Below the pieces are notes generated by a model. That model was given only the letters and a program-made list of their open reading frames with translations, had not been told where the DNA came from and ran no database searches. From positions 42,874,430 through 42,938,429 of the forward strand of contig NC_090399.1 in the NCBI RefSeq assembly GCF_036365525.1: a DNA stretch of 64,000 bases, written 5' to 3'. The translations under genes were made by a program, and so were the position numbers. Below are positions 24,001-58,189 of the stretch, one piece after another. Source of the DNA: Heterodontus francisci. Lineage: Eukaryota. Within the stretch, counting starts at the first letter, position 1, and every line of letters starts with the position of its first letter.

Positions 24001-27000
24001 GAGAGACACATCAGGACATGAACCCCAAAACACCAACCCCACCAGAGAGACATCAGGATATGAACCCCAAAACACCAACACCACTCGGAGACACATCAGG
24101 ACATGAACTGCAAAACCCAACCCCACAGAAAGACATCTGGACATGATGCCCAAAACACCAACCCCACACAGAGTCATCAGGACATGAACCCCAAAACACC
24201 AACCCCACACAGAGACACATTAGTTCATGAACCCCAAAACACCAACCCCACGGAGAGACATCAGTTCATGAACCCCAAAACACCAACCCCACGGAAAGAC
24301 ATCAGGACATGAACCCCAAAACACCAACACAAGAGAGACATCAGGACATGAACCCCAAAACACCAACCCCACACAGAGAGACATCAGGACATGAACCCCA
24401 AAACACCAAACCCACACAGAGAGAGACATCAGGACATGAACCCCAAAACACAAACCCCACACAGAGAGAGACATCAGGACATGAACCCCAAAACACCAAC
24501 CACACACAGAGAGAGACATCAGGACATGAACCCCAAAACACCAACACCACACAGAGAGACATCAGGACATGAACCCCAAAACACCAACTCCACACAGAGA
24601 GCCATCAGGACATGAACCCCAAAACACAAACCCCACACAGAGAGAGACATCAGGACATGAACCCCAAAACACCAACCCCACAGAAAGACATCAGGACGTG
24701 AACCCCAAAACACCAACACCTCACAGAGAAACATCAGGACGTGAACCCCAAAACACCAACCCCACACAGAGAAACATCAGGACATGAACCCCAAAACACC
24801 AACCCCACACAGAGAAACATCAGGACATGAACCCCAAAACACCAACCCCACACAGAGACATCAGGACATGAACCCCAAAACACCAACCCCACACAGAGAA
24901 ACATCAGGACATGAACCCCAAAACACCAACATCACACATCGAGACACATCAGGACATGAACCCCAAAACACTAACCCCACACAGAGAGACACATCAGGAC
25001 ATGAACCCCAAAACACCAACCCCACACAGAGACACATCAGGATATGAACCCCAAAACACCAACCCCACGCAGAGACACATCAGGGCATGAACCCCAAAAC
25101 ACCAACACGAGAGAGACATCAGGACATGAAACCCAAAACACCAACCCCACCAGAGAGACATCAGGATATGAACCCCAAAACACCAACCCCACAAAGAGAG
25201 ACACATCAGGACATGAACCCCAAAACACCAACCCCACCAGAGAGACATCAGGATATGAACCCCAAAACACCAACCCCACGCAGAGAGACATCAGGATATG
25301 AACCCCAAAACACCAACACCACTCGGAGACACATCAGGACATGAACCCCAAAACCCAAACCCACAGAAAGACATCTGGACATGAACCCCAAAACACCAAC
25401 CCCACGCAGAGTCATCAGGACATGAACCCCAAAACACCAACCCCACACAGAGACACATCAGTTCATGAACCCCAAAACACCAACCCCACGGAAAGACATC
25501 AGGACGTGAACCCCAAAACACCAACACAAGAGAGACATCAGGACATGAACCCCAAAACGCCAACCACACACAGAGAGACACATCAGGATATGAACCCAAA
25601 ACACCAACACTACAGAGATAAAGACATCAGGACATGAACCCCAAAACACCAACACAAGAGAAACATCAGGACATAAACCCCAAAACACCAACCCCACACA
25701 GAGAGGCATCAGGACATGAACCCCAAAACACCAACACAAGAGAGACACATCAGGACTTGAACCCCAAAACACCAACACAAGAGAAACATCAGGACATGAA
25801 CCCAAAACACCAACCCCACACATCGAGACACATCAGGACATGAACCCCAAAACACCAACACAAGAGAGACATCAGGACATGAACCCCAAAACACCAACCC
25901 CACACAGAGAGACATCAGGACATGAACCCCAAAACACCAACACAAGAGAGACATCAGGACATGAACCCCAAAACACCAACACAAGAGAGACATCAGGACA
26001 AGAACCCCAAAACACCAACACAAGAGAGACATCAGGACATGAACCCCAAAACACCAACCCCACACAGAGAGACATCAGGACATGAACCCCAAAACACCAA
26101 CACAAGAGAGACATCAGGACATGAACCCCAAAACACCAACCCCACGCAGAGAGGCATCAGGACATGAACCCCAAAACACCAACACAAGAGAGACATCAGG
26201 ACATGAACACCAAAACACCAACCCCACACAGAGAGGCATCAGGACATGAACCCCAAAACACCAACACAAGAGAGACATCAGGACATGAACCCCAAAACAC
26301 CAACCCCACACAGAGAGGCATCAGGACATGAACCCCAAAACACCAACACAAGAGAGACATCAGGACATGAACCCCAAAACACCAACACAAGAGAGACATC
26401 AGGACATGAACCCCAAAACACCAACACAAGAGACACATCAGGACATGAATCCCAAAACGCCAACCCCACATATCGAGACACATCAGGACATGAACCCCAA
26501 AACACTAACCCCACACAGAGAGACACATCAGGACATGAACCCCAAAACACCAACCCCACACAGAGAGACATCAGGATATGAACCCCAAAACACCAACCCC
26601 ACGCAGAGACACATCAGGGCATGAACCCCAAAACACCAACACGAGAGAGACATCAGGACATGAACCCCAAAACACCTACCCCACCAGAGAGACATCAGGA
26701 TATGAACCCCAAAACACCAACCCCACAAAGAGAGACACATCAGGACATGAACCCCAAAACACCAACCCCACCAGAGAGACATCAGGATATGAACCCCAAA
26801 ACAACAACCCCACGCGGAGAGACATCAGGACGTGAACCCCAAAACACCAACATCACACATCGAGACACATCAGGACATGAACCCCAAAACACCAACCCCA
26901 CCAGAGAGACATCAGGATATGAACCCCAAAACACCAACCCCACAAAGAGAGACACATCAGGACATGAACCCCAAAACACCAACCCCACCAGAGAGACATC

Positions 27001-30000
27001 AGGATCTGAACCCCAAAACACCAACCCCACGCAGAGAGACATCAGGATATGAACCCCAAAACACCAACACCACTCGGAGACACATCAGGACATGAACCCC
27101 AAAACCCAACCCCACAGAAAGACATCTGGACATGAACCCCAAAACACCAACCCCACGCAGAGTCATCAGGACATGAACCCCAAAACACCAACCCCACACA
27201 GAGACACATCAGCTCATGAACCCCAAAACACCAACCCCACGGAAAGACATCAGGACGTGAACCCCAAAACACCAACACAAGAGAGACATCAGGACATGAA
27301 CCCCAAAACGCCAACCACACACAGAGAGACACATCAGGACATGAACCCCAAAACACCAACAACACACAGAGAGACATCAGGATATGAACCCAAAACACCA
27401 ACACTACAGAGAGAAAGACATCAGGACATGAACCCCAAAACACCAACACAAGAGAAACATCAGGACATGAACCCCAAAACACCAACCCCACACAGAGAGG
27501 CATCAGGACATGAACCCCAAAACACCAACACAAGAGAGACATCAGGACATGAACCCCAAAACACCAACACAAGAGAGACATCAGGACATGAACCCGAAAA
27601 CACCAACACCGCACAGAGACACATCAGGACTTGAACCCCAAAACACCAACACAAAAGAAACATCAGGACATGAACCCAAAACACCAACCGCACACATCAA
27701 GACACATCAGGACATGAACCCCAAAACACCAACACAAGAGAGACATCAGGACATGAACCCCAAAACACCAACCCCACACAGAGAGACATCAGGACATGAA
27801 CCCCAAAACACCAACACAAGAGAGACATCAGGACATGAACCCCAAAACACCAACACAAGAGAGACATCAGGACATGAACCCCAAAACACCAACACAAGAG
27901 AGACATCAGGACATGAACCCCAAAACACCAACCCCACACAGAGAGACATCAGGACATGAACCCCAAAACACCAACACAAGAGAGACATCAGGACATGAAC
28001 CCCAAAACACCAACCCCACGCAGAGAGGCATCAGGACATGAACCCCAAAACACCAACACAAGAGAGACATCAGGACATGAACCCCAAAACAACAACCCCA
28101 CACAGAGAGGCATCAGGACATGAACCCCAAAACACCAACACAAGAGAGACATCAGGACATGAACCCCAAAACACCAACCCCACACAGAGAGGCATCAGGA
28201 CATGAACCCCAAAACACCAACACAAGAGAGACATCAGGACATGAACCCCAAAACACCAACACAAGAGAGACATCAGGACATGAACCCCAAAACACCAACC
28301 CCACGCAGAGAGGCATCAGGACATGAACCCCAAAACACCAACCCCACACATCGAGACACATCAGGACATGAATCCCAAAACGCCAACCCCACATATCGAG
28401 ACACATCAGGACATGAACCCCAAAACACTAACCCCACACAGAGAGACACATCAGGACATGAACCCCAAAACACCAACCCCACACAGAGACACATCAGGGC
28501 ATGAACCCCAAAACACCAACACGAGAGAGACATCAGGACATGAACCCCAAAACACCTACCCCACCAGAGAGACATCAGGATATGAACCCCAAAACACCAA
28601 CCCCACAAAGAGAGACACATCAGGACATGAACCCCAAAACACCAACCCCACCAGAGAGACATCAGGATATGAACCCCAAAACACCAACCCCACGCAGAGA
28701 GACATCAGGATATGAACCCCAAAACACCAACACCACTCGGAGACACATCAGGACATGAACCCCAAAACCCAAACCCACAGAAAGACATCTGGACATGAAC
28801 CCCAAAACACCAACCCCACGCAGAGTCATCAGGACATGAACCCCAAAACACCAACCCCACACAGAGACACATCAGTTCATGAACCCCAAAACACCAACCC
28901 CACGGAAAGACATCAGGACGTGAACCCCAAAACACCAACACAAGAGAGACATCAGGACATGAAACCCAAAACGCCAACCACACACAGAGAGACACATCAG
29001 GACATGAACCCCAAAACACCAACACCACACAGAGAGACATCAGGATATGAACCCAAAACACCAACACTACAGAGAGAAAGACATCAGGACATGAACCCCA
29101 AAACACCAACACAAGAGAGACATCAGGACATGAACCCCAAAACACCAACACCGCACAGAGACACATCAGGACTTGAACCCCAAAACACCAACACAAGAGA
29201 AACATCAGGACATGAACCCAAAACACCAACCCCACACATCGAGACACATCAGGACATGAACCCCAAAACACCAACACAAGAGAGACATCAGGACATGAAC
29301 CCCAAAACACCAACCCCACACAGAGAGACATCAGGACATGAACCCCAAAACACCAACACAAGAGAGACATCAGGACATGAACCCCAAAACACCAACATAA
29401 GAGAGACATCAGGACATGAACCCCAAAACACCAACACAAGAGAGACATCAGGACAAGAACCCCAAAACACCAACACAAGAGAGACATCAGGACATGAACC
29501 CCAAAACACCAACCCCACACAGAGAGACATCAGGACATGAACCCCAAAACACCAACACAAGAGAGACATCAGGACATGAACCCCAAAACACCAACCCCAC
29601 GCAGAGAGGCATCAGGACATGAACCCCAAAACACCAACACAAGAGAGACATCAGGACATGAACCCCAAAACACCAACCCCACACAGAGAGGCATCAGGAC
29701 ATGAACCCCAAAACACCAACACAAGAGAGACATCAGGACATGAACCCCAAAACACCAACCCCACACAGAGAGGCATCAGGACATGAACCCCAAAACACCA
29801 ACACAAGAGAGACATCAGGACATGAACCCCAAAACACCAACACAAGAGAGACATCAGGACATGAACCCCAAAACACCAACCCCACGCAGAGAGGCATCAG
29901 GACATGAACCCCAAAACACCAACACAAGAGAGACATCAGGACATGAACCCCAAAACACCAACCCCACACATCGAGACACATCAGGACATGAACCCCAAAA

Positions 30001-33000
30001 CACCAACCCCACACAGAGACACATCAGGACATGAACCCCAAAACACCAACCCCACACAGAGACACATCAGGACATGAACCCCAAAACACCAACCCCACAC
30101 ATCGAGACACATCAGGACATGAACCCCAAAACACCAACCCCGCACAGAGACACATCAGGACATGAACCCCAAAACACCAACCCCACACAGAGACACATCA
30201 GGACATGAACCCCAAAACACCAACACCGCACAGAGACACATCAGGACATGAACCCCAAAACACCAACACCGCACAGAGACACATCAGGACATGAACCCCA
30301 AAACACCAACACAAGAGAGACATCAGGACATGAACCCCAAAACACCAACCCCACACAGAGAGGCATCAGGACATGAACCCCAAAACACCAACACAAGAGA
30401 CACATCAGGACATGAACCCCAAAACACCAACCCCACACAGAGACACATCAGGACATGAACCCCAAAACACCAACACCACACAGAGAGACATCAGGATATG
30501 AACCCCAAAACACCAACCCCACACAGAGACACATCAGGACATGAACCCCAACACACCAACCCCACAGAGACACATCAGGATATGAACACCAAAACACCAA
30601 CCCCACACAGAGAGACATCAGTACATGAACCCCAAAACACCAACCCCACCCAGAGAGACATCAAGACATGAACCCCAAAACACCAACCCCACACAGAGAC
30701 ACATGAGGACATGAACCCCAAAACACCAACCCCACACAGAGAGAGACCTCAGGATATGAACCCCAACACACCAACCTCGCACAGAGAGACATCAGGATAT
30801 GAACCCCAAAACACCAACCCCACCCAGAGACACATCAGGACATGAACCCCAAAACACCAACCCCACAGAAAAACATCAGGACGTGAACCCCAAATCACCA
30901 ACACCACACAGAGAAACATCAGGACATGAACCCCAAAACACCAACCCCACAGAGAGAAAGACATCAGGACATGAACCCCAAAACACCAACCCCACAGAAA
31001 AACATCAGGACGTGAACCCCAAAACACCAACCCCACAGAGAGAAAGACATCAGGACATGAACCCCAAAACACCAACACCACACATCGAGACACATCAGGA
31101 CATGAACCCCAAAACACCAACCCCACAGAGAGACACATCAGGACATGAACCCCAAAACACTAACCCCACACAGAGAGACATCAGGACATGAACCCCAAAA
31201 CACCAACCCCACACAGAGACACACATCAGGACATGAAACCCAAAACACCAACCCCACGGAGAGAGACATCAGGACATGAACCCCAAAACACCAACCTCAC
31301 ACAGAGAGACATCAGGACATGAACCCCAAAACACCAACCCCACACAGAGAGACATCAGGACATGAACCCCAAAACACCAACCCCACACAGAGAGACATCA
31401 GGACATGAACCCCAAAACACTAACCCCACACAGAGAGACATCAGGACATGAACCCCAAAACACTAACCCCACACAGAGAGACATCAGGACATGAACCCCA
31501 AAACACCAACCCCACACAGAGAGACATCAGGACATGAACCCCAAAACACCAACCCCACACAGAGAGACATCAGGACATGAACCCCAAAACACTAACCCCA
31601 CACAGAGACACACATCAGGACATGAAACCCAAAACACTAACCCCACACAGAGAGACACATCAGGACATGAACCCCTAAACACCAACCCCACAGAGAGACA
31701 CATCAGGACATGAACTCCAAAACACCAACCCCACACAGAGAGACATCAGGACATGAACCCCAAAACACCAACCCCACACAGAGAGACATCAGGATATGAA
31801 CCCAAAACACCAAGCCCACACAGAGACACATCAGGACATGAACCCCAAAACACCAACCCCAGATAGACACATCAGGACATGAACCCCAAAACACCAACCC
31901 CACACAGAGACACATCAGGACATGAACCCCAAAACACCAACCCCACAGAAAAACATCAGGACATGAACCCCAAAACACCAACCCCACAGAGAGACACATC
32001 AGGACATGAACCCCAAAACACCAACCCCAGATAGACACATCAGGACATGAACCCCAAAACACCAACCCCACAGAAAAACATCAGGACATGAACCCCAAAA
32101 CACCAACCCCACAAAGAGAGACACATCAGGACATGAACCCCAAAACACCAACCCCACCAGAGAGACATCAGGATATGAACCTCAAAACACCAACACCACT
32201 CGGAGACACATCAGGACATGAACCCCAAAACCCAAGCCCACAGAAAGACATCTGGACATGATGCCCAAAACACCAACCCCACGCAGAGTCATCAGGACAT
32301 GAACCCCAAAACACCAACCCCACGGAGAGACATCAGTTCATGAACCCCAAAACACCAACCCCACGGAAAGACATCAGGACATGAACCCCAAAACACCAAC
32401 ACAAGAGAGACATCAGGACATGAACCCCAAAACACCAACCCCACACAGAGAGACATCAGGACATGAACCCCAAAACACCAACCCCACACAGAGAGACATC
32501 AGGACATGAACCCCAAAACACTAACCCCACACAGAGACACACATCAGGACATGAAACCCAAAACACTAACCCCACACAGAGAGACACATCAGGACATGAA
32601 CCCCTAAACACCAACCCTACAGAGAGACACATCAGGACATGAACTCCAAAACACCAACCCCACACAGAGAGACATCAGGACATGAACCCCAAAACACCAA
32701 CCCCACACAGAGAGACATCAGGATATGAACCCAAAACACCAAGCCCACACAGAGACACATCAGGACATGAACCCCAAAACACCAACCCCAGATAGACACA
32801 TCAGGACATGAACCCCAAAACACCAACCCCACACAGAGACACATCAGGACATGAACCCCAAAACACCAACCCCACAGAAAAACATCAGGACATGAACCCC
32901 AAAACACCAACCCCACAGAGAGACACATCAGGACATGAACCCCAAAACACCAACCCCAGATAGACACATCAGGACATGAACCCCAAAACACCAACCCCAC

Positions 33001-36000
33001 AGAAAAACATCAGGACATGAACCCCAAAACACCAACCCCACAAAGAGAGACACATCAGGACATGAACCCCAAAACACCAACCCCACCAGAGAGACATCAG
33101 GATATGAACCTCAAAACACCAACACCACTCGGAGACACATCAGGACATGAACCCCAAAACCCAAGCCCACAGAAAGACATCTGGACATGATGCCCAAAAC
33201 ACCAACCCCACGCAGAGTCATCAGGACATGAACCCCAAAACACCAACCCCACGGAGAGACATCAGTTCATGAACCCCAAAACACCAACCCCACGGAAAGA
33301 CATCAGGACATGAACCCCAAAACACCAACACAAGAGAGACATCAGGACATGAACCCCAAAACACCAACCCCACACAGAGAGACATCAGGACATGAACCCC
33401 AAAACACCAAACCCACACAGAGAGAGACATCAGGACATGAACCCCAAAACACCAACACCACACAGAGAGACATCAGGACATGAACCCCAAAACACCAACC
33501 CCACACAGAGAGAGACATCAGGACATGAACCCCAAAACACCAACCCCACAGAAAGACATCAGGACGTGAACCCCAAAACACCAACATCTCACAGAGAAAC
33601 ATCAGGACGTGAACCCCAAAACACCAACCCCACACAGAGAAACATCAGGACATGAACCCCAAAACACCAACCCCACACAGAGAGACATCAGGACATGAAC
33701 CCCAAAACACCAACCCCACACAGAGAGACATCAGGACATGAACCCCAAAACACCAACCCCACACAGAGAAACATCAGGACATGAACCCCAAAACACCAAC
33801 CCCACACAGAGAAACATCAGGACATGAACCCCAAAACACCAACCCCACACAGAGAGACATCAGGACATGAACCCCAAAACACTAACCCCACACAGAGAGA
33901 CACATCAGGACGTGAACCCCAAAACACCAACATCACACATCGAGACACATCAGGACATGAACCCCAAAACACCAACCCCACACAGAGAAACATCAGGACA
34001 TGAACCCCAAAACACCAACCCCACACAGAGAAACATCAGGACATGAACCCCAAAACACCAACCCCACACAGAGAAACATCAGGACATGACTCCCAAAACA
34101 CCAACCCCACACAGAGAAACATCAGGACATGAACCCCAAAACACCAACCCCACACAGAGAAACATCAGGACATGAACCCAAAAACACCAACCCCACACAG
34201 AGAAACATCAGGACATGAACCCCAAAACACCAACCCCACACAGAGAAACATCAGGACATGAACCCCAAAACACCAACCCCACACAGAGAGACATCAGGAC
34301 ATGAACCCCAAAACACCAACCCCACACATCGAGACACATCAGGACATGAATCCCAAAACGCCAACCCCACATATCGAGACACATCAGGACATGAACCCCA
34401 AAACACTAACCCCACACAGAGAGACACATCAGGACATGAACCCCAAAACACCAACCCCACACAGAGAGACATCAGGATATGAACCCCAAAACACCAACCC
34501 CACGCAGAGACACATCAGGGCATGAACCCCAAAACACCAACACGAGAGAGACATCAGGACATGAACCCCAAAACACCAACCCCACCAGAGAGACATCAGG
34601 ATATGAACCCCAAAACACCAACCCCACAAAGAGAGACACATCAGGACATGAACCCCAAAACACCAACCCCACCAGAGAGACATCAGGATATGAACCCCAA
34701 AACACCAACCCCACGCAGAGAGACATCAGGATATGAACCCCAAAACACCAACACCACTCGGAGACACATCAGGACATGAACCCCAAAACCCAACCCCACA
34801 GAAAGACATCTGGACATGAACCCCAAAACACCAACCCCACGCAGAGTCATCAGGACATGAACCCCAAAACACCAACCCCACACAGAGACACATCAGTTCA
34901 TGAACCCCAAAACACCAACCCCACCAGAGAGACATCAGGATATGAACCCCAAAACACCAACCCCACGCAGAGACACATCAGGACATGAACCCCAAAACAC
35001 CAACACGAGAGAGACATCAGGACATGAACCCCAAAACACCAACCCCACCAGAGAGACATCAGGATATGTACCCCAAAACACCAACCCCACGCAGAGACAC
35101 ATCAGGACATGAACCCCAAAACACCAACCCCACCAGAGAGACATCAGGATATGAACCCCAAAACACCAACACCACTCGGAGACACATCAGGACATGAACC
35201 CCAAAACCCAACCCCACAGAAAGACATCTGGACATGAACCCCAAAACACCAACCCCACACAGAGAGACACATCAGGACATGAACCCCAAAACACCAACCC
35301 CACACAGAGAGACATCAGGATATGAACCCCAAAACACCAACCCCACGCAGAGACACATCAGGACATGAACCCCAAAACACCAACACGAGAGAGACATCAG
35401 GACATGAACCCCAAAACACCAACCCCACCAGAGAGACATCAGGATATGAACCCCAAAACACCAACACCACTCGGAGACACATCAGGACATGAACCCCAAA
35501 ACCCAACCCCACAGAAAGACATCTGGACATGAACCCCAAAACACCAACCCCACACAGAGAGACACATCAGGACATGAACCCCAAAACACCAACCCCACAG
35601 AAAGACATCAGGACGTGAACCCCAAAACACCAACACCTCACAGAGAGACATCAGGACATGAACCCCAAAACACAAACCCCACACAGAGAGAGACATCAGG
35701 ACATGAACCCCAAAACACAAACCCCACACAGAGAGAGACATCAGGACATGAACGCCAAAACACCAACACCTCACAGAGAGACATCAGGACATGAACCCCA
35801 AAACACAAACCCCACACAGAGAGAGACATCAGGACATGAAACCCAAAACACAAACCCCACACAGAGAGAGACATCAGGACATGAACCCCAAAACACCAAC
35901 ACCTCACAGAGAGACATCAGGACATGAACCCCAAAACACCAAACCCACACATAGAGAAAGACATCAAGACATGAAACCCAAAACACCAACCCCACACACA

Positions 36001-36095
36001 CACACAGATATCAGGACATGAACCCCAAAATACCAACCCCAGAGAGAGACAGCAGTACATGAACCCCCAAAAAAAGAACCAAACAGAGAGAAAGA
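1..36095. repeat. Large tandem satellite, 39-45 bp unit (consensus CATCAGGACATGAACCCCAAAACACCAAC + CCCACACAGAGAGA), about 850 copies, open at the left window edge
   Basis: The constant 29-nt core recurs without interruption, followed by a 10-16 nt tail drawn from a limited set (ACAAGAGAGA, CCCACACAGAGAGA, CCCACTTAGAGCGAGA, CCCACATATCGAGACA, CCCACAGAAAAA, CCCACCAGAGAGA). The last units degenerate at about 35,940-36,095. Copy number is estimated as length divided by mean unit size. Confidence 0.99.
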
Positions 36096-36279
36096 GGCAC
36101 TGATATCCCACAACCTCCCTTCCCAACCCCTGACAATGCTCTAAAAGCCTGTGATCTCCCAGATCTCACACTGAATTCCAATCAGGGACTCTGTGAACTC
36201 ATGTCTCACCCGTTCTTCCTCCAGTCCCCCCACAATCTAACCCGATTTGTTACCTGGAACTTGCTGCACTCACCTTTCA

Positions 36280-36318
36280 TTACATTAAAGGCGCTATATA
36301 AATATAAATTGTTGTTGT
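36280..36318 (+). mobile_element. Isolated SINE/L2-type 3' tail remnant
   Basis: TACATTAAAGGCGCTATATAAATATAAATTGTTGTTGT resembles the AAGGCGCTATATAAATGCAAGTTGTTGTTG tail of elasmobranch Deu/Sac-type SINEs (recalled). Confidence 0.45.
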
Positions 36319-36454
36319 AATCTGTGCGCCCTGCTCCTGTAGCACCATCTACTGTACGGTGAGGTCTCTGGAGCTCCTCAGAGCTCAACATTTGAGTGTG
36401 GACTGTTAACACTGTGTGAGGTGGGGGAGCTCCTGAATTTAACCCAGAGCATTT

Positions 36455-37350
36455 TATATCGAAGTTTGCTGTCGACACGAAGTTGGGTAACTCAGTAAAT
36501 TGTGTAGACAGGAGACAGGAAGTTACAAAGAGACACTGACAGATTAAATGAGCGGGCAAAACTAGGGCAGATGGAGTTCACTGTGGGAAATATGAGATCA
36601 TCCACTTTGGGTCTAAGAAAGATAAATGGGTATATTTTCCATCCGGTGGGAAACTTGAACCTGGGGAGAGCAAATGGAGAAATCATTACAGACCAGTGGA
36701 CAGGGACAATAAGGATTTGGAAGGCTGGCCTTTATCTCGGGGGGACTGCAATACAAAGGGGTGGAAGTTATGTTCCAGTTTATATAAAGCTCTGGTCAGA
36801 CTCCATTTGGAGTAACTGTGTTCAGTTCTGGGCCCCGGACCTCAGGAAGGATAGAATGGCCTTGGGGAGAGAGCAACACAGATTCACCAGAATGATCCTG
36901 GGGTTTAGAGGGTTAAATTATGAGGACATGTTGTTTAGACTCAGCTTGTATTCTCTCCATTATGGAAGATTGAAGGTGATGTGATCGAGGTGTTTAAAAT
37001 GTTACAAGGATTTGATAGAATCAATATGAAGAAACGATTTCCCCGAGTGGGAGAATCAAGAACGAGGAGACATAATCTTAAAATTAGAGCCAGACTGTTC
37101 TGGAGTGAAATCAGGAAGCACTTCTTCACACAAAGAGCAGTGGAAACCTGGAACTCTCTCCCCCAAAAGTCTGTGGATACAGGGGATCAATTGCAGCTTT
37201 CAGAGCTGAGATAGACTTTTGTTGGGTCAGTGTCTCGACGGAGATTGAGCAAACGTAGGAAAATGGAGTTGAGACATAGATCAACCATGATCTAATTGAA
37301 TAGTGGAACAGGCTCAAGGGGCTGAATACCCTACCCCTGTTCTTATGTTC
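36455..37350 (+). mobile_element. CR1 LINE 3' fragment (RT C-terminus + 3'UTR), degenerate
   Basis: Starts at an ISKFA(V)DTKLG-like motif; ORF pieces CVQFWAPDLRKDRMAL...FTRMI and IEVFKMLQGFDR...RKHFFTQRAVETWNSLP; ends in a TTCTTATGTTC tail. Confidence 0.92.
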
Positions 37351-37498
37351 CTCTCTCTCCATCCCCATATCCCTGTCCCTCAGTCCACTGCCCACACCCT
37401 GCTCCCACCATGGTCTCTCCTTCTCCAGCCCCAGTACCGAGCCTGCTACCATCTCCCTCAGACTCCATTATCCACTGAGCAAGGGGAAATGCTCCAGT

Positions 37499-38870
37499 AA
37501 AAAGAGAAAATGCTGGAAATACTCAGGTCAGGTAATATCTGTGGAGAAAGAAAGAGAGTTAACGTTTCCGGTTGATGACATTTGATCAGAACTGGGAAAA
37601 GTTATAAATGTCATTAAGGTTTTAAGCAAGTGAACAGGGGGAGGGTGGGAAAAGAATAACAGGGAAGATGGAAGGCAGGGGAGATTAAATCACGAAAGGG
37701 TTGATGGTGGAAGGCCAAAGGGAGTGGTAATAGGACAAGTAAAGAAACAAAAGAGGAGTCTAGAGGTGTAAATGACGGAATCATGAACAGCTGCTTCCGA
37801 AACCAAAAACAATCGAAAAACGAGTTAAAATCAAAAGCTGCAAAAAAAAGGGAAACAAAAAAGGGGCCAGAGATGACAATCTGAAATTGTTGAACTCAAT
37901 GTTGAGTTCGAAAGACTGTAAAGTGCCTCATTGAAACATGAGGTTCAGTTCCTCGAGCTTAAATTGAGCTTCATTGGAACAGGAGGCCGAGGACAGAGAG
38001 GTCAGAGTGGGAGCAAAGCGTAAAGTTACAATGGAAGGCCACCGGAAGCTGGGAAATTGCAGATTGAACAGAGGTGTTGCGCAAAGCAATCACCCAATCT
38101 GTATTTTATCTCCCAAATGTAGAGCAGACTGCATCATGAGCAGTGAATACAGGAGACTAAATTGAAAGTACATGTAAATTGCTGTTTTACCTGGAAGGAA
38201 TGTTTGTGGCCTTGGACAGTGAGAAGAGAGCAGGTAAAAGGGCAGGTGTTGCATCTCATGCGCTTGCAATGGAAAGGGGCTGTGGAAAGGGGAGAGGCTG
38301 TTGGGGGTGATTGAGAAGTGGACCAGGGTGTCGTAGAGGGAAATGTCCCTTTGGAATGTTGAAATGGGAGGGGGAAGATGTGTTTGGTGGTCGTATCACG
38401 CTGGAGGTGGTTCAAATGGCCAAGGATGAATACGGAGGCTGGTGGGGTGGAAGGTGGGGACAAGAGGAACCTCATCATGGTTCTGGGAGGGAGGGGAAGG
38501 GGTGAAGGCAGATGTGCGGGAAATGGGACGGACATGATCAAGAGCCCCCTTGAACTATGGTGGGGGGACTCCTTCGTTGAGGAGAAAGGAAGACATATCG
38601 GAAGCACTGGTATGAAAGGGTGCATCGTCAGAACAGATATGATGGAGATGGAGAAACTGGGAGAATAGACTGGAGTCCTTACAGGAAGCAGAGTGTGAGG
38701 AAGAGTAGTCGAGTTAGCTGAAAGAATCAGTAGGTTTATCGTGAATATAAGCTGATTGTCTCCATTCCTGGATGTCGGCTGAGAGGTCAAGGAAGAGAAG
38801 GGAAGAGTTGGAGATGCAACATGTGAAGGTGAGTGAAAGGTGGAAATTGGAAACTGATGCAATTTTCCAG
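37499..38870 (-). mobile_element. Penelope-like element 3' part (RT C-terminus, GIY-YIG remnant, pseudo-LTR)
   Basis: Minus ORF 38134-38862 ends CKRMRCNTCPFT...VKQQFTCTFNLVSCIHCS, typical of the PLE linker and GIY-YIG start. The terminal repeat at 37,499-37,600 carries a degenerate hammerhead core. Confidence 0.85.
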
Positions 38871-38914
38871 ATCAGTGTGATATCAGAAAATGGCACCAAT
38901 ACACTTTGTTTCCA

Positions 38915-39766
38915 ATTTCCACTGAGGAAAGGTCACAGACCTGAAATGTTAACTCAGTTTCTCTCTCTCCACAGATGCTGCCCGACCAGCTGTGTATTTC
39001 CAGAACTGTTTTAATTTCAGGTTTCCAGCATCTGCATTATCTTTTATTTTATTTCAGTGATTTACTTGTACCTCTTTCAATCAAGTATATTATATTCACT
39101 GCTCACAATGCGATCTCCTCTGCATTGTGGAGAAAGCAGATTGGGTGACCGCTTTGTGAAACACCTCCATTCAGTCCACAAGAGTGACCCAAGCTTCTCG
39201 TTCCCTGTTATTTTAATTCTCCACCTTGCTCTCACTCTGACATCTCTGTCCTCAGCCTCATACACTGTTTCAATGAAGCTCGAGGAACAGAACCTCATCT
39301 TTCAATGAGGCAGTTTACAGCTTCCAGAATCATTGAGTTCAACTATTTCAGAATGTAATCCCTTCCTCCATTTTGTTTCCTACTTCTTTGCGGATTTCAG
39401 TTTTACTTTTGTTTTTATCCTTTTTCTTTGCTTTAGAAGGGCAGGTTTTCATGATTCTGCCAATCACACCTCCTCTTTACTTGTGCCATTACCACTCCCT
39501 TTGGCCTTGCAGCAACAACTCTTTTTTTTTCCATTTAACCCCTTCTCCCGTTCACCCGATACAGACCTTCCCTTTTGTTCTTTTTCCAACCTTCCCCCTT
39601 TCACCTCTTTAAACCTGATTGCATTTCTAACTTTTCCCGGTTCTGACAAAAGGTCATCGACCTGAAACGTTAACACTTTCTCCACAGATGGTGCCAGAAC
39701 TGCTGAGTATTTCCAGAATTTTCTATTTTTATTCAGATTTCCAGCAACCACAGTATTTTGCTTTTG
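38915..39766 (+). mobile_element. Penelope-like element: pseudo-LTR, GIY-YIG remnant, pseudo-LTR (opposite orientation to the adjacent copy)
   Basis: GESRLGDRFVKHLHSVHK remnant flanked by two similar repeats (38,922-39,050 and 39,643-39,766), each starting CTGA..AAAGGTCA..GACCTGAAA(C/T)GTTAAC. Confidence 0.85.
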
Positions 39767-39773
39767 TGCTGAG

Positions 39774-40759
39774 GCCCCAGTACCCAGTCTAGCACAGCCC
39801 CGATCACACCCCATTACTCACTGATCGAGGGTTAATGCCCCAGTACCCAGTCTGGCACTGTCCCTCTCACACCCCATTACTCACTGATCGAGAGTTAATG
39901 CCCCAGTACCCAGCCTGGCACTGTCCCTCTCACACCCATTACTCACTGACCGAGGGTTAATTTCCCAGTACCCAGCCTGGCACTGTCCCTCTCACACCCA
40001 TTACTCACTGACCGAGGGTTAATGCCCCAGTACCCAGTCTGGCACTGTCCCTCCCACAACCCATTACTCACTGACCGAGGGTTAATGGCCCAGTACCCAG
40101 TCTGGCACTGTCCCTTTCACACCCCATTACTCACTGACCGAAGGTAAATGCCCCAGTACCCAGTCTAGCACTGTCCCTCTCACACCCCATTGCTCACTGA
40201 CCGAGGGTTAATGCCCCAGTACCCAGTCTGGCACTGTCCCTCTCACACCCCATTACTCACTGACCGAGGATTAATGCCCCAGTACCCAGCCTGGCACTGT
40301 CCCTCTCACAACTCATTACTCACTGATCGAGGGTTAATGCCCCAGTACCCAGTCTGGCACTGTCCCTCTCACACCCCATTACTCACTGACCGAGGATTAA
40401 TGCCCCAGTACCCAGCCTGGCACTGTCCCTCTCACAACTCATTACTCCCTGATCGAGGGTTAATGCCCCAGTACCCAGTCTGGCACTGTCCCTCTCACAC
40501 CCCATTACTCACTGACCGAGGATTAATGCCCCAGTACCCAGCCTGGCACTGTCCCTCTCACAACTCATTACTCCCTGATCGAGGGTTAATGCCCCAGTAC
40601 CCAGTCTGGAACTGTCCCTCTCACACCCCATTACTCACTGACCGAGGATTAATGCCCCAGTACCCAGCCTGGCACTGTCCCTCTCACAACTCATTACTCC
40701 CTGATCGAGGGTTAATGGCCCAGTACCCAGTCTAGCACTGTCCCTCTCACACCCCATTA
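39774..40759. repeat. 63-bp minisatellite, distal block (about 15.5 copies)
   Basis: Unit TTACTCACTGACCGAGGGTTAATGCCCCAGTACCCAGTCTGGCACTGTCCCTCTCACACCCCA, giving the 21-aa periodicity in the ORF track. A diverged copy lies at about 37,428-37,499 beyond the Penelope insertions. Confidence 0.97.
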
Positions 40760-43700
40760 AGAACATAAGAAATAGGAGCAGGAGTAGGCCATTCAGCCCC
40801 TCAAGCCTACCCTGCCAATCATTAAGATCATGGCTGATCGGCCCCAGACCTCAACTCCTCTTTCGTGCCAGCTCCTCTTAGCCCTCAACTCCCCAATATT
40901 TCAAAAATCTATCTACCTCCTCTTTAAATACTTTCAGTGATCTAGCCTCCACAACTTTCTGGGCGAGAGAATTCCAGACATTCACTACCCTGAGAGAAGA
41001 AATTCCTTCGCATCTCAGTTTTAAATGAGTGTCCCCTTATTCTGTAACTATGTCCCCTAGTTTGAGATTCCCCCACTGGTGGAAACATCTTCTCAACATC
41101 TACCCTGTCAAGCCCCCTCAGTATCTCGTACCTTTCAATAAGATCACCCCTCATTCTTCGAAACTCTAATGAAAAAAGGCCTAACCTGTTTAGCCGTTCT
41201 TGATAAGTCAATCCCTTCATCCCAGGAATCAGCCTCGTGAATCTCTTTTGAACTGCCTCCAATGCCAGTATATCCTTTCTGAAATATGGGGACCAAAACT
41301 GTACGCAGTACTCCAGGTGCGACCTCACCAACACCCTGTACAGTTGTAACAAGATTTCCCTATTTTTAAACTCTAACCCCCGAGCAATAAAGGCCAAAAT
41401 TCCATTTGCCTTCTTAATTACTTGCTGCACCTGCATGCTAACTTTGTGTTTCATGCACAAGAACACTCAGATCCCTCTGTGCTGAACTTTATTGAAGTCT
41501 TTCTCCATTTAAATAATAGTCTGCCTTTTGATCTCACACTTCCCCACATTAAACTCCATCTGTCAAGTTTTTGCCCATTCACTCAACCTATCTATATCCC
41601 CCTTCAGATTCCTTATGTCCTCATCACAATGTGCCCTCCCACCTATTTTTGTATCAGCAGCAAATTTGGATACATTACACTCTGCTCCCTCCTCCATGTC
41701 ATTAATATAAATAAATAATTGAGTCCCCAAGCCTGATCCTTGTGGCACTCCACTAGTTATGTATTTCTAACCTGAAAAAGACCCATTAATCCCGAATCTG
41801 TCGTCTGTGAGTTAACCAATCCTCAATCTATGCTGATACATTACCCACAATACCGTGAGCTCCTATCTTGTGCAATAATCTTTTATGTGGCACCTTATCA
41901 AATGCCTTCTGGAAATCTAAATACACTCCATCTACTGGTTCCTGTTTATCAACTCTGCTTGTTATAACCTCAAAAGAATTCTCGCAAATTTGTCAAACAT
42001 GATTTCCCTTTCATAAAACCATGTTGACTCTGTTTGATTGCATTAAGCTTTTCTAAACATCCTGTTATTTCTTCCTTAATAATGGACTCCAGCATTTTCC
42101 CAATGACCGATGTTAAGCTGACTGGCCTATAGTTTCCTGCTTTTTGTCTCCCTCCCTTCCTGAACAGGGGCATCACATTAGTGGTTTTCCAATCTGCTGG
42201 GACAATCCCGGAATCCAGTGAGTTCCGGAATATTTCGACCAATGCCTCCATTATCTCTGCAGCCACTTCCTTTAAAACCCTTGGATGTCGGCCATCAGGT
42301 CCTAGTGACTTGTTTGCCTTTACTCCCATTAGTTTGTCAAATACTTTGTCACTCGTGATAGAGACTGTTACAAGATCTTTCCTCCCATTAGCTCCTTGCT
42401 TATCTGATATCTGTGGGATGTTTATAGTGTCCTCCGCCGTGAAGACCGATGCAATATATTGGTTTAAATTATCTGCCATTTCCCTGTTCCCCGTTGTCAA
42501 TTCTCCAGTCGCATCCTCCAAGGGTCCCACGCTCACTTTAGCTACTCTCTTTTTTATATACCCATAGAAGCTCTTGCTGTTTGTTTTTATATTTCTTGCC
42601 AATTTACTTTCATAATCAGTTGTCTCCTTCTTTATTAGCTTTTTAGTCATCCGCTGCTAGTTCCCAAAAAATTCCCAATCCTCTGGCCTACCATTAGTTT
42701 TTGCCGCTTTGTATGCCTTAGTTTTTGATTGGATACTCTCCTTGACCGCCTTTGTTAACCACGGGTAGTTCATCCTTCTCATCGAGTCCTGCTTTTTGAC
42801 CGGGATAGATTTTTGCTGAGCGTTATGAAATATCTGCTGAAATGTCTGCCACTGCTCATCCACTGACCTTCCCCTTGGACTATTTTCCCAGCCTGCTTGA
42901 GACAACTCTTTCTTCATACCTCCGTAATTGCCCTTGTTTAAGTTGAAGACACTGGTTTGTGACCCGAGTTGCTCGCCCTCAAACTGAATTTGAAATTCTA
43001 CCATGTTGTGATTGCTACCCCCTCGAGGATCCTTAACTACCATATCTCTTATTAATCCTACCTCATTACACATTACTAGATCGAAAATAGCCTGTTCCCT
43101 GGTAGGTTCTGCAATGGATTGTTCTAAGTAACAATCCCTGATGCACTCTACAAATTCGTCTTCCATGTTACCTCTGCCAATCAATATGCAGATTAAAATC
43201 ACCCATGACAATTGTCGTGCCCTTCTTACATGCCTCCATTATTTCCTGATTTATATTTTGTCTGACAATGAGGCAACTCTTCGGGGGGCCTATAGACGAC
43301 AGCCACCCGTGACCTCTTCCCCTTGCTATTCCTGATTTCAACCCAAACTGATTCCACATCACGATCTATTGCACCTATATCACTACTCACCACTGCACTG
43401 ATACCTTACTTTATTAACAAAGCTACCCCACCTCCTTTTCCTTTTTGCCTATTTTTCTGGAATACCCTTGAATATTGAGTTCCCAGTCTTTGTCACCCTG
43501 CAACCACGTCTCTGTAATAGCTATCAAATCATATTCATTTATTTCGATATGTGCCATCAACTCATCTATCTTGTTACAAATGCTGCGTGCATTCAGATAA
43601 AGAGCTTTAAGCTTTGACTTTTTACCATTATTACTCATTCTGGTTCTAATTTCTGCTAAACTCTTCTGCTTATATTTTCTGCCCCTTCCTGTCACACTTA

Positions 43701-43801
43701 GATTACCGTTCGCCTCTTCACTACCCTGGAACTCTGCTCTCTCGTTTCTTTTAGATTTTTTAAACTTCCCTTCAATTGAACCCTCCCCCCAACTAATTAG
43801 T
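40760..43801 (-). mobile_element. CR1 LINE spanning nearly all of ORF2 (APE endonuclease + RT), frameshifted, 5'-truncated
   Basis: ORF pieces LYLNARSICNK..IAITETWL, IVMGDFN, EPTREQAIFDLV..SNHNMV, GNYRPVSLTSVIGKMLE..QHGFMKGKSCLTN, PQGS..SKFAADTKIGG, LEYCVQFWSP..; 3' tail CCTATTTCTTATGTTCT. Inserted inside a 63-bp unit with TTA at both junctions (40,757-40,759 and 43,802-43,804). Confidence 0.96.
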
Positions 43802-44624
43802 TTACTCACTGACCGAGGGTTAATGCCCCAATACCCAGTCTGGCACAGCCCCTCTCACACCCCATCACTCACTGACTGAGGGTTAATGCCCCAATACCCA
43901 GTCTGGCACTGTCCCTCTCACACCCCATTACTCACTGACCGAGGGTGAATGCCCCAATACCCAGTCTGGCACTGTCCCTCTCACACCCCATCACTCACTG
44001 ACTGAGGGTTAATGCCCCAATACCCAGTCTGGCACTGTCCCTCTCACACCCCATTACTCACTGAGGGTTAATGCCCCAGTACCCAGTCTGGCACTGCCCC
44101 TCTCACACCCCATTACTCACTGACCGAGGGTTAATGCCCCAATACCCAGTCTGGCACTGTCCCTCTCACACCCCATTACTCACTGACCGAGGGTTAATGC
44201 CCCAGTACCCAGTCTGGCACTGTCCCTCTCACACCCCATTACTCACTGACTGAGGGTTAATGCCCCAGTACCCAGTCTGGCACTATCCCTGTCACACCCC
44301 AGCACTCACTTACTGAGGGTTAATGTCCCAATACCCAGTCTGGCACTGTCCCTCTCACAACCCATTACTCACTGACTGAGGGTTAATGCCCCAATACCCA
44401 GCCTGGCACTGTCCCTCTCACACCCCATTACTCACTGACCGAGGGTTAATGCCCCAGTCCCCAGTCTGGCACTGTCCCTCTCACACCCCATCACTCACTG
44501 ACCGAGGGTTAATGCCCCAATACCCAGTCTGGCACTGTCCCTCTCACACCCCATCACTCACTGACCGAGGGTTAATGCCCCAATACCCAGTTTGACACTG
44601 TCCCTCTCACACTCCATTACTCAC
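43802..44624. repeat. 63-bp minisatellite, proximal block (about 13 copies), abutting the splice donor of the leader exon
   Basis: Same unit as 39,774-40,759. The terminal copy ends ...ACTCCATTACTCAC, i.e. minus-strand GTGAGTAATGGAGT, the intron start. Confidence 0.97.
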
Positions 44625-44673
44625 CTGCAGAGACCCCTCCACACAGAAGGACCAGCACTATCAGTCCAATCAT
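44625..44673 (-). CDS. Signal-peptide (leader) exon, probably of an MHC class I heavy-chain gene: MIGLIVLVLLCGGVSA-G|
   Basis: Minus strand GCAACA ATG ATT GGA CTG ATA GTG CTG GTC CTT CTG TGT GGA GGG GTC TCT GCA G|GTGAGT. A at -3, hydrophobic core, V-S-A cleavage motif, consensus phase-1 donor. Resembles shark class I leaders as recalled and sits under an SXY-type promoter. Too short for the ORF track. Lineage cannot be assigned. Confidence 0.75.
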
Positions 44674-44771
44674 TGTTGCTTCCCTCGACAAGCTGAAAGG
44701 AGCAGTTTGTGGGAAATCCTTTTCCAAAAAACCTTTGCTTCTCAGTCTGTGAGCTGTGTCCTGTACTGATG

Positions 44772-44904
44772 ATATTAAACTCTGTTCCAGTTTCCTCAGA
44801 CTGATTGGTTTGACATAAGTTAATGTCCAATCAGAATTAAAACAAACTATGAATCATCAGGCTCCAGGCGGAATAGTTTCAGACAGTTTGATTCGGGGAT
44901 CCCC
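44772..44904 (-). promoter_or_regulatory. MHC-type proximal promoter: kappaB-like site, X1/X2, Y box, CCAAT box, TATA-like element
   Basis: Minus-strand order: GGGGATCCCC (44,895-44,904); X1-like CCTGGAGCCTGATG (44,855-44,868; 9/14 to HLA-DRA X1 CCTAGCAACAGATG); overlapping X2-like TGATTCA; 20-nt spacer; Y box CTGATTGGAC (44,825-44,834); AACCAATCAG (44,801-44,810); TTTAATAT (44,772-44,779), about 100 nt above the ATG. Confidence 0.72.
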
Positions 44905-45009
44905 AACAAACTTAACAAATATCGTGAACTATCCAAATCAGAGAAATACTGATAGTTACATCACCAGTTGTCAGGGAGGATAAACGTTTGCTACAAAAAG
45001 TGAGAAGAT

Positions 45010-45286
45010 TATTACGAACAGGAGGTGGTCAGTCAGCTCTTCGGGCCTGTTACACTATTCAAATAGATCATTGCTGATCCTGTATCTTAATTCCATTTTC
45101 CTGGCTCTGCTCCATATCCCTTGATACCGTTATCCAATAATATTCAATTAATCTTAGTCTGAAACGCTCCAATTGTCCCACCTTTCACAACTATTTTGAG
45201 GAGAGAGTTCCAAATGTTTATTACCCTTGTTGTGAAAATGTGCTTCCTGACTTCCTTCCTAAACAGCATAGCTCGAATTTTAAGAT
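45010..45286 (-). mobile_element. Old CR1 3' fragment
   Basis: Reverse complement resembles CR1 terminal sequence (RKEVRKHIFTTRV..IWNSL-like, then a 3'UTR with CAGGCCCGAAGAGCTGA). Confidence 0.6.
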
Positions 45287-47487: not shown

Positions 47488-48047
47488 TGGGCTTCTCTTT
47501 TATCCTCCCCTCCCATCTCACTGTGCTCTCACTTTCTGAGCTGCTCTTTTATCCTCCTCACCAGTCTCACTGTGCTCTCACTCTCCGAGCTGCTCTTTTA
47601 TCCTCCTCACCAGTCTCACTGCGCTCTCACTCTCCGAGCTGCTTTTCTATCCTCCCCGCCAGTCTCACCGTGCTCTCACTCTCCAAACTGCTCTATTATC
47701 CGCCTCCCGCCGGTCTCACTGTGCTCTCGCTCACCGAGCTCCTCTTTTATCCTCCTCGCCGGTCTCACTGTGCTCTCACTCTCCAGGGCTGCTCTTTTAT
47801 CCTCCCCGCCAGTCTCAGTGTGCTCTCACTCTCCAGGGCTGCTGTTTTATCCTCCCCGCCAGTCTCAGTGTGCTCTCACTCTCCAGGGCTGCTCTTTTAT
47901 CCTCCCCGCCAGTCTCAGTGTGCTCTCACTCTCCAGGGCTGCTCTTTTATCCTCCCCGCCAGTCTCAGTGTGCTCTCACTCTCTGAGCTGCTCTTTTATC
48001 CTCCCCGCCAGTCTCACTCTCCGAGCTGCTCTTTTATCCTCCCCGCT
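47488..48047. repeat. 49-50 bp pyrimidine-rich minisatellite (about 11 copies)
   Basis: Unit GCTGCTCTTTTATCCTCCCCGCCAGTCTCAGTGTGCTCTCACTCTCCAGG, near-exact 50-bp period at about 47,770-47,985. Confidence 0.95.
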
Positions 48048-57719: not shown

Positions 57720-58189
57720 AATACTGACCCTCCGACAGTGCAGCGCTCCCTCACTACTGACCCTCCGACAGTGCAGCGCTCCCTCACTACTGACCCTCCG
57801 ACAGTGCAGCGCTCCCTCACTACTGACCCTACGACAGTGCTGCTCTCCCTCAGTACTGACCCTCCAACAGTGCAGCGCTCTCTCAATACTGACCCTCCGA
57901 CAGTGGAACGCTCCCTCAGTACTGACCCTCCTACAGTGCAGCACTCCATCAGTAGTGACCCTCTGACAGTGCTGCTCTCCCTCAGTACTGACCCTCCGAC
58001 AGTGCAGCGCTCCCTCAGTACTGACCCTCCGACAGTGCAGCGCTCCCTCAGTACTGCCCCTCCGACAGTGCAGCGCTCCCTCGGTACTGATCCTCCGACA
58101 ATGCAGCTCTTCGTCAGTACTGACCCTCTGACAGTGCAGCACTCCATCAGTAGTGACCCACTGACAGTGCTGCACTCCCTCAGTACTGC
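57720..58189. repeat. 33-bp minisatellite (about 14 copies)
   Basis: Unit CAGTACTGACCCTCCGACAGTGCAGCGCTCCCT; 11-aa periodicity in the ORF track. Confidence 0.96.

What the first reader, a model, noticed from the sequence alone, without database searches (positions are those of the whole stretch)
44625..44904. Hidden MHC-type first exon with a well-preserved SXY/kappaB promoter in a sea of repeats
Seen: a 16-aa signal peptide exon with a phase-1 GTGAGT donor. Upstream on the same strand lie GGGGATCCCC, an X1-like 14-mer, X2-like TGATTCA, exactly 20 nt to CTGATTGG, a second CCAAT and a TATA-like element. Known: RFX (X1), CREB/ATF (X2) and NF-Y (Y), with about two helical turns between X and Y, define MHC I/II and B2M promoters (NLRC5/CIITA enhanceosome). 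An upstream kappaB enhancer A and a downstream CCAAT are class I features. Inference: this is the 5' end of a cartilaginous-fish MHC class I gene whose X1-Y block looks strikingly like HLA-DRA's, informative about the ancestral MHC enhanceosome. A clear S box and ISRE were not identified.
Basis: partly seen in the sequence, partly recalled or inferred. Interest (0 to 1): 0.8.

Follow-up and report, generated by a model that had tools for sequence, protein, structure and literature searches.

The report
Probable shark MHC class I gene start
A 380-base unique island between repeats holds a dense cluster of promoter motifs and a 16-residue signal-peptide exon; together they most likely start a horn-shark MHC class I-type gene, but the rest of the gene lies outside the window, so the identity is inferred, and this scan has already noted similar gene starts in this genome.

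Summary
The sequence features are real. On the minus strand, ATG 44673 opens MIGLIVLVLLCGGVSA plus one base (phase 1), followed by CAG|GTGAGT. Upstream, within 231 nt, lie GGGGATCCCC, TGATTCA, CTGATTGG, CCAATCAG and TTTAATA. I also found a one-mismatch ISRE-like element.

The cluster is far beyond chance. This is the only convincing leader-like exon in the window, and the only 300-bp stretch with at least 3 of 4 motif classes. The island is unique between a LINE tail and a minisatellite.

Two details fail. The X2-Y spacer is 15 nt (22 start-to-start), not 20. The "X1" box is weak: 9/14 to the HLA-DRA X1, with the RFX half-site not kept. No S box was found.

No alpha1 or other domain exon lies in the 44.6 kb downstream. 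That stretch holds a minisatellite, a LINE, other repeats and a 36-kb satellite.

Class I identity therefore rests on promoter architecture and on unverified scan notes: many class I genes with giant satellite introns on this chromosome, and an equivalent promoter-leader island (s1-872046) that a follow-up agent reported as transcribed, spliced and already annotated.

Verdict: a probable ordinary class I gene start, a new member of a known kind, of modest interest.

The parts
44895..44904 (-). Palindromic kappaB-type site GGGGATCCCC (enhancer A-like), -231..-222 from the ATG
   Evidence: It is one of only 3 distinct GGGRNWYYCC sites in the 27.9-kb non-satellite part.
44875..44880 (-). GAAACT IRF half-site, in the position where class I promoters carry the ISRE. 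It is not a full ISRE.
   Evidence: About 0.7 GAAACT per kb occur in the background, so it is weak on its own.
44855..44868 (-). X1-like 14-mer CCTGGAGCCTGATG. A weak candidate RFX site.
   Evidence: It shares 9/14 positions with the HLA-DRA X1 as printed in PMC4806502. The RFX half-site is not conserved.
44850..44856 (-). X2-like TGATTCA, a TRE/CRE-like heptamer overlapping X1 by two bases as in HLA-DRA
44827..44834 (-). Y box CTGATTGG, an inverted extended CCAAT and NF-Y-type site. It lies 15 nt after X2.
   Evidence: (pattern expected 0.00 times by chance).
44801..44808 (-). Forward CCAATCAG box, the exact reverse complement of the Y box, 18 nt downstream of it
44784..44794 (-). ISRE-like GAAACTGGAAC, one mismatch to GAAANNGAAAC, between the CCAAT box and the TATA-like element
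   Evidence: It is 1 of 3 GAAANNGRAAC matches in 27.9 kb, counting both strands.
44773..44779 (-). TATA-like TTTAATA, -106..-100 from the ATG. The inferred transcription start is near 44750-44742.
   Evidence: The start site is inferred, not shown.
44625..44673 (-). Coding part of exon 1: ATG, then MIGLIVLVLLCGGVSA, plus the first base (G) of the next codon. Phase 1. V-S-A fits the -3/-1 rule for signal-peptide cleavage.
44619..44624 (-). 5' splice site CAG|GTGAGT (consensus)
44633..45012 (-). Unique island holding the promoter and exon 1. It is bounded upstream by a LINE 3' tail and downstream by the minisatellite.
   Evidence: BLAST of the island against the window gives only a self-match for 44633-45012.
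2..44624 (-). Presumed intron 1, at least 44.6 kb. It holds a 63-bp minisatellite (43802-44624 and 39774-40759), a LINE inserted in that array (about 40760-43801), mixed repeats (36.1-39.8 kb) and a 43-bp satellite (2-36072).
   Evidence: That it is an intron is inferred.

Best explanation
The stretch 44625-45012 (minus strand) is the proximal promoter and first exon of an MHC class I-type gene, probably one of the multicopy non-classical class I genes of the horn shark.

Proposed mechanism (inferred): NF-Y binds the inverted Y box and the forward CCAAT box. A bZIP factor (CREB/ATF or AP-1) binds TGATTCA, 15 nt upstream of Y. An RFX-type complex may bind the weak X1-like sequence cooperatively. 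NF-kappaB and IRF factors use GGGGATCCCC and the GAAACT / GAAACTGGAAC elements for inducible expression.

Transcription would start about 25-30 nt after TTTAATA, giving a first exon of about 120-125 nt. That exon encodes only the signal peptide and ends in phase 1 with a G. It would splice across an intron of at least 44.6 kb, filled with repeats and satellite, to an alpha1 exon beyond the window's start.

Shown: the motifs, their order and spacing, the open leader, the donor, the uniqueness of the island and its non-random nature. Inferred: factor binding, the transcription start, splicing, and class I identity.
For: - All elements and the leader/donor are read directly from the sequence.
- The X2-15-Y pattern is expected 0.00 times by chance.
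- Two of the four CCAATCAG 8-mers and one of the three kappaB consensus sites in 27.9 kb fall within 100 nt here.
- This is the only convincing leader-like exon in the window.
- This is the only 300-bp stretch with at least 3 of 4 motif classes.
- The island is unique, not a repeat copy.
- There is no upstream ATG in the presumed 5' UTR.
- The layout (enhancer A, then the SXY module, then CCAAT and TATA, within about 200 nt of the ATG) matches published descriptions of HLA class I promoters (PMC3987962; PMC7281430). The literature stresses fixed X-Y spacing (PMC4374748; PMC4381081).
- Elasmobranch class Ib genes are multicopy and MHC-linked (PMC10751288; PMC12562908).
- Scan notes, not checked by me, place expressed class I genes with giant satellite introns on this chromosome. 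They also describe an equivalent SXY-plus-leader island that a follow-up agent reported as the transcribed, spliced and already annotated first exon of a class I gene.
- Weak hint of transcription: small runs X1-X3 (137-160 million letters) hold 23-37% of the sampled words of 44560-44960. That is about the share a 120-170-nt exon would give.
Against: - No alpha1, alpha2 or alpha3 exon, and no Pfam domain, occurs in any open frame of 80 aa or more downstream within the window. The link to a class I body is therefore unseen.
- No S box was found, although published work names it as the NLRC5-specific determinant.
- X1 is weak.
- There is no canonical ISRE at the canonical place.
- The word search with the 78-aa open frame around the leader found nothing, though the length filter makes that uninformative for full-length proteins.
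- RNA evidence could not be obtained.
- Phase-1 leader exons are shared by many immunoglobulin-superfamily genes. Double CCAAT, kappaB and TRE motifs are not exclusive to the MHC.
Confidence: 0.6

Rival explanations
1. An orphan or pseudogene 5' end. This would be a genuine class I-type promoter and leader exon whose gene body has been lost or cut off by satellite expansion and LINE insertions, so that no productive mRNA is made.
For: - There is no coding exon in the 44.6 kb downstream.
- The presumed intron begins at once with 13 donor-bearing minisatellite units and holds a LINE and a satellite of at least 36 kb.
- Scan notes list several isolated 'hidden' leader exons, and class I parts in odd orientations, in this genome.
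Against: - The ATG, open leader, consensus donor, both 8-mer NF-Y sites and the palindromic kappaB site are all intact.
- Notes, unchecked by me, report that expressed class I genes in this genome tolerate satellite introns of more than 57-60 kb.
- Partial word shares in small runs are compatible with transcription.
Confidence: 0.2
2. The first exon and promoter of another gene with a phase-1 leader, such as MHC class II, W-category, beta2-microglobulin or a B7/butyrophilin-like immunoglobulin-superfamily gene.
For: - Phase-1 signal-peptide exons are general to the immunoglobulin superfamily (established knowledge).
- X-Y modules also drive class II and B2M genes.
- Notes describe B7-like promoter-leader cassettes elsewhere in this genome.
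- No class I exon is seen here.
Against: - An upstream kappaB palindrome, a second forward CCAAT and a TATA-like box after Y form the class I layout.
- The exon ends exactly at the predicted signal cleavage site, as in class I. Class II first exons carry extra mature residues (established knowledge).
- beta2m is not listed among the multicopy genes in elasmobranchs (it is named only as a conserved flanking gene), whereas class Ib genes are multicopy.
- There is no V or C1 exon within 8 kb.
Confidence: 0.12
3. A chance or transposon-derived motif cluster, for example a solo LTR with CCAAT and TATA boxes and a downstream donor, that is not a cellular gene start.
For: - The surroundings are LINEs, LTR-retroelement fragments and satellites.
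- The motif tests are post hoc.
Against: - The island has no second copy in the window.
- The composite pattern is expected 0.00 times.
- Leader-like exons are about 1 per 56 kb of strand, yet one sits exactly downstream of the only motif-dense stretch.
Confidence: 0.05

Closest known systems
Mammalian MHC class I proximal promoter (enhancer A / ISRE / SXY module / CCAAT / TATA) with a leader-only exon 1
   Same: - The order is the same: kappaB palindrome, X-like, X2-like heptamer, inverted CCAAT (Y), forward CCAAT, TATA-like.
- All elements lie within about 230 nt of the ATG.
- The leader exon ends in phase 1 with a G.
   Different: - There is no recognisable S box, which is the NLRC5 determinant.
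- X1 is weak.
- The ISRE-like element has one mismatch and lies between CCAAT and TATA, not between enhancer A and S.
- X2 is TRE-like (TGATTCA) rather than CRE-like.
- Intron 1 is at least 44.6 kb, against about 130 bp in HLA class I genes (the HLA figure is from my own knowledge, not a tool result).
HLA-DRA X1-X2-Y block
   Same: - X1 and X2 overlap by two bases.
- Y is CTGATTGG.
- The X2-to-Y register is kept. The DRA X1/X2 letters were checked in PMC4806502. The DRA spacer length comes from my own knowledge only.
   Different: - X1 matches 9/14 and X2 5/7.
- The central RFX half-site is not kept, so 'strikingly like DRA' is an overstatement.
- DRA has no upstream kappaB palindrome and no second forward CCAAT.
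Earlier finding s1-872046 in this genome (SXY-type promoter plus phase-1 leader exon in an island between LINEs)
   Same: It has the same kind of island on the same chromosome, with a giant satellite-filled first intron. Its follow-up reports it as transcribed, spliced and already annotated as a class I first exon.
   Different: It is a different locus, 23.5 Mb away. I could not compare the sequences (a search by sequence was blank) and did not check its claims.
Elasmobranch multicopy non-classical class I lineages (UBA, UEA)
   Same: They are multicopy and MHC-linked (PMC10751288; PMC12562908). A note places a UBA-type gene 0.54 Mb from this window.
   Different: The lineage cannot be assigned from a 16-residue leader.

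Membership tests
MHC class I gene (5' end) | Exon 1 encodes only the signal peptide and ends in phase 1 | tested here: met
   44673-44625 is 16 codons plus G. VSA fits the -3/-1 rule. The donor is CAG|GTGAGT.
MHC class I gene (5' end) | Exon 1 splices to an alpha1 (MHC_I) exon, followed by alpha2 and alpha3 | not testable with these tools
Sequence outside the window is not readable.
MHC class I/II SXY enhanceosome promoter | Y box (inverted CCAAT, NF-Y) | tested here: met
   CTGATTGG at 44834-44827.
MHC class I/II SXY enhanceosome promoter | X2 box (CREB/ATF heptamer) adjoining X1, at a fixed distance from Y | tested here: met
   TGATTCA lies at 44856-44850, 15 nt before Y (22 nt start-to-start), and the pattern is expected 0.00 times by chance. 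The literature gives X-Y as 20-22 bp, but its box definitions are in figures that are not held. The heptamer is TRE-like, not a perfect CRE.
MHC class I/II SXY enhanceosome promoter | X1 box recognisable as an RFX site | tested here: inconclusive
   CCTGGAGCCTGATG shares 9/14 positions with the DRA X1. The half-site is not conserved, and no position weight matrix was available.
MHC class I/II SXY enhanceosome promoter | S (W) box about 16 bp upstream of X | tested here: not met
   The 26 nt between the kappaB palindrome and X1 (GAATCAAACTGTCTGAAACTATTCCG) show no S-like sequence that I could recognise. No published shark S consensus is known to me.
MHC class I promoter, class I-specific features | Enhancer A kappaB site upstream of SXY | tested here: met
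   GGGGATCCCC at 44904-44895 fits GGGRNWYYCC.
MHC class I promoter, class I-specific features | ISRE next to enhancer A | tested here: not met
   Only a GAAACT half-site lies there (44880-44875). A one-mismatch ISRE-like element lies elsewhere, at 44794-44784.
MHC class I promoter, class I-specific features | Forward CCAAT and TATA downstream of Y | tested here: met
   CCAATCAG at 44808-44801 and TTTAATA at 44779-44773.
MHC class I gene (5' end) | Transcribed in immune tissues | not testable with these tools
   Only partial word shares in coded runs are available.

The most novel reading that the evidence does not exclude
This may be a functional shark class I promoter that lacks the S box and a canonical ISRE. 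Instead it would combine a class II-like X2-Y register with a kappaB palindrome and two opposed, perfect NF-Y sites. If so, the X-Y core with its fixed spacing would predate the class I/class II split, while the S box (NLRC5 specificity) and the enhancer A-adjacent ISRE would be later additions, or would be dispensable in this non-classical lineage.
Probability: 0.12. Interest if true: 0.5.

Novelty: new member of a known kind. Interest (0 to 1): 0.3.

Why it matters
If this leader is confirmed to splice to a class I body, it adds one more promoter to a set of shark class I promoters. Aligned together, those promoters could show which enhanceosome elements (kappaB, X2, Y, CCAAT, spacing) are conserved from cartilaginous fish to mammals, and which (S box, ISRE position) are not.

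My literature searches found no paper that analyses SXY modules in sharks. A systematic comparison would therefore be new, but this single locus by itself is not.

It also illustrates how small first exons in this genome are isolated by introns of tens of kilobases filled with satellite. That matters for annotation.

Tried and rejected
2. **Word search.** I searched with the 78-aa stop-free frame around the leader, hoping for partial transcript-derived proteins. There were 2 candidates and none scored. The length filter excludes full-length class I proteins, so this says little.
3. **Big representative-protein search.** I did not run it. Only 17 real residues would match an annotated protein, which is too few for significance, and the search was flagged as costly.
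4. **Metagenome scan.** The X2-Y-CCAAT pattern gave 0 hits.
5. **The search of earlier findings by sequence.** Both the island and the satellite gave blanks.
6. **Full-text search for pieces of the leader peptide.** This gave 0 papers.
7. **Shark class I papers.** The two Almeida et al. papers are not held.
8. **A possible distal second X-Y module at 44975-44930.** It reads CCTGACAACTGG-TGATGTAA-14 nt-CTGATTTGG. Its alignment to the proximal module scored below the shuffle mean (17 against 19.2 ± 3.2). I rejected it as unsupported.
9. **Homology between exon 1 and the minisatellite unit beyond the donor.** This was not significant: 128 of 500 shuffles scored as high.
10. **Spliced model.** None was built or searched, because only one exon is visible.

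Full report
**What is there**

Read on the minus strand (coordinates checked), the stretch 44904-44619 holds these elements in order:

| Element | Coordinates | Position from the ATG |
|---|---|---|
| GGGGATCCCC | 44904-44895 | -231..-222 |
| GAAACT half-site | 44880-44875 | -207..-202 |
| CCTGGAGCCTGATG ('X1-like') | 44868-44855 | -195..-182 |
| TGATTCA ('X2-like', overlaps X1 by two bases) | 44856-44850 | -183..-177 |
| CTGATTGG (inverted CCAAT, 'Y'), after a 15-nt spacer | 44834-44827 | -161..-154 |
| CCAATCAG (exact reverse complement of Y), after 18 nt | 44808-44801 | -135..-128 |
| GAAACTGGAAC (one mismatch to GAAANNGAAAC) | 44794-44784 | -122..-112 |
| TTTAATA | 44779-44773 | -106..-100 |
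| ATG | 44673 | +1 |

- The 99 nt between TTTAATA and the ATG contain no other ATG.
- The ATG has an A at -3.
- The reading frame gives MIGLIVLVLLCGGVSA plus one G and ends at 44625 before CAG|GTGAGT. The exon is therefore phase 1, and V-S-A fits the -3/-1 rule for signal-peptide cleavage.

The distance from TGATTCA to CTGATTGG is 15 nt (22 start-to-start, 18 to the ATTGG pentamer), not 20.

**Is it more than chance?**

- The exact TGATTCA-N15-CTGATTGG pattern occurs once and is expected 0.00 times in shuffles.
- In the 27.9-kb non-satellite part of the window, counting both strands, there are four CCAATCAG 8-mers. Two of them sit here, 26 nt apart and in opposite orientation. One of the three distinct kappaB-consensus sites is also here.
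- A mechanical scan of both strands for ATG, an open frame, a hydrophobic core of at least 8 of 9 residues and a GTRAGT donor found two candidates in the whole window. This one is the only convincing one.
- Sliding a 300-bp frame over the non-satellite part, only this place has three or four of the four motif classes (kappaB, 8-mer NF-Y, TRE, ISRE-like). Everywhere else has at most two.
- The island 44633-45012 has no other copy in the window. It is bounded upstream by a LINE 3' tail (45013 onward, similar to 37259-37345) and downstream by a minisatellite.

These tests were designed after seeing the motifs. Even so, the margin is large enough that I treat the island as a real promoter plus leader exon, not a chance or transposon artefact.

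**What lies downstream**

- The donor is the first base of a 63-bp minisatellite (43802-44624, 13 copies). Every unit of it carries GTGAGT.
- A LINE with reverse-transcriptase frames on the minus strand interrupts the array at about 40760-43801. The array resumes at 39774-40759.
- Then come 3.7 kb of mixed repeats, then a 43-bp satellite of about 850 copies from 36072 to the window's start. It has extreme strand asymmetry.
- All stop-free frames of 80 aa or more on the minus strand between 36.1 and 39.8 kb gave no Pfam match.

So no alpha1 or any other domain exon follows within 44.6 kb. If the exon is used, intron 1 is at least 44.6 kb long.

**What gene is it?**

The published layout of HLA class I proximal promoters is enhancer A with an ISRE, then the SXY module, then CCAAT and TATA. 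All of this lies within about 200 nt of the start codon (PMC3987962; PMC7281430). Strict spacing between the boxes is required (PMC4374748; PMC4381081).

The shark island reproduces these features:
- the order of the elements;
- the compactness;
- the Y box;
- the second CCAAT;
- the kappaB palindrome;
- an X2-Y register of about two helical turns.

It does not reproduce these:
- an S box, which Ludigs et al. identify as the NLRC5-specific determinant;
- a canonical ISRE beside the kappaB site;
- a good X1. The X1-like 14-mer shares only 9/14 positions with the HLA-DRA X1 as printed in a probe list (PMC4806502), and it loses the central half-site.

The leader exon ends exactly at the predicted cleavage site and contributes a G to the next codon. 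That is the class I arrangement (my own knowledge), but it is not unique to class I.

Context favours class I:
- Elasmobranch non-classical class I genes are multicopy and MHC-linked (PMC10751288; PMC12562908).
- This scan's notes name the genome as horn shark. I have not checked them. They report a UBA-type class I gene 0.54 Mb away, and class I genes with satellite introns of more than 57-60 kb.
- The notes also list several other 'hidden class I-like promoter plus leader' islands. A follow-up agent reported one of them (s1-872046) as the transcribed, spliced and already annotated first exon of a class I gene.

So the scan has found this kind of thing before on other DNA.

**What I could not do**

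- **RNA test.** The look-up of sequencing runs returned small runs that hold 23-37% of the sampled words of 44560-44960. That is about what an exon of 120-170 nt would give. No splice junction was therefore observed, and the word shares cannot be assigned to the exon.
- **Protein search.** The leader is too short. The 78-aa stop-free frame found nothing.
- **Other searches.** A metagenome pattern scan and a literature search for the peptide were blank.
- **Spliced model.** None was built, because only one exon is visible.

**Verdict**

| Reading | Probability |
|---|---|
| Proximal promoter and signal-peptide exon of a horn-shark MHC class I-type gene, followed by a giant repeat-filled first intron | about 0.6 |
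| Same origin, but now an orphan or pseudogene | about 0.2 |
| First exon of another SXY-regulated or immunoglobulin-superfamily gene | about 0.12 |
| Chance or transposon-derived | about 0.05 |

The claim of a 'well-preserved SXY' that is 'strikingly like HLA-DRA' is overstated. Only Y, the X2-Y register and the general order are well kept.

This is a new member of a known kind and of modest interest. Its value would come from a joint alignment of all such promoters in this genome, not from this locus alone.

Noticed in passing
window 43802-44624 and 39774-40759: A 63-bp minisatellite (13.1 + 15.7 copies, 91-93% matches) starts exactly at the exon 1 donor. Every unit carries TCA|GTGAGT, giving about 28 potential decoy 5' splice sites on the transcribed strand. 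Exon 1 itself is not homologous to the unit beyond the donor. The array is split by a LINE insertion.
   Followed up: partly
window 2-36072: A 43-bp satellite (about 850 copies, 88% matches, with an 82-bp higher-order period) fills more than half the window. Its strand asymmetry is extreme: AT skew about +0.77 and GC skew about -0.43 on the + strand. It would lie inside the presumed first intron.
   Followed up: no
window 44930-44975 (minus): An upstream arrangement, CCTGACAACTGG-TGATGTAA-14 nt-CTGATTTGG, mimics an X1-X2-Y module with the same 22-nt start-to-start register, but its CCAAT is broken. Its alignment to the proximal module is not above shuffles.
   Followed up: yes
window 44709-44717 (minus): GGATTTCCC, a kappaB-like 9-mer lacking the first G, lies inside the presumed 5' UTR.
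   Followed up: no
window 47491-48018, 49410-49929, 57722-58188: Three further tandem arrays, with periods of 49/100, 15 and 33 bp, lie upstream of the island. The 15-bp array gives long open frames of PQR/SHPSE-type repeats on the minus strand, which are probably non-coding.
   Followed up: no
window 59000-63200: Fragments of an LTR retroelement lie here: a reverse-transcriptase tail at 60993-61394 (+) and integrase H2C2 and core domains at 62682-63095 (+). LINE reverse-transcriptase fragments lie at 41973-42650 (-) and 52437-53168 (-).
   Followed up: partly
   Followed up: no
window 44560-44960: Runs of organisms C and D and a coral metatranscriptome each hold about 9% (about 3) of the sampled 31-mers of this stretch. 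It is unknown which part is shared. It may be a repeat or low-complexity piece.
   Followed up: no
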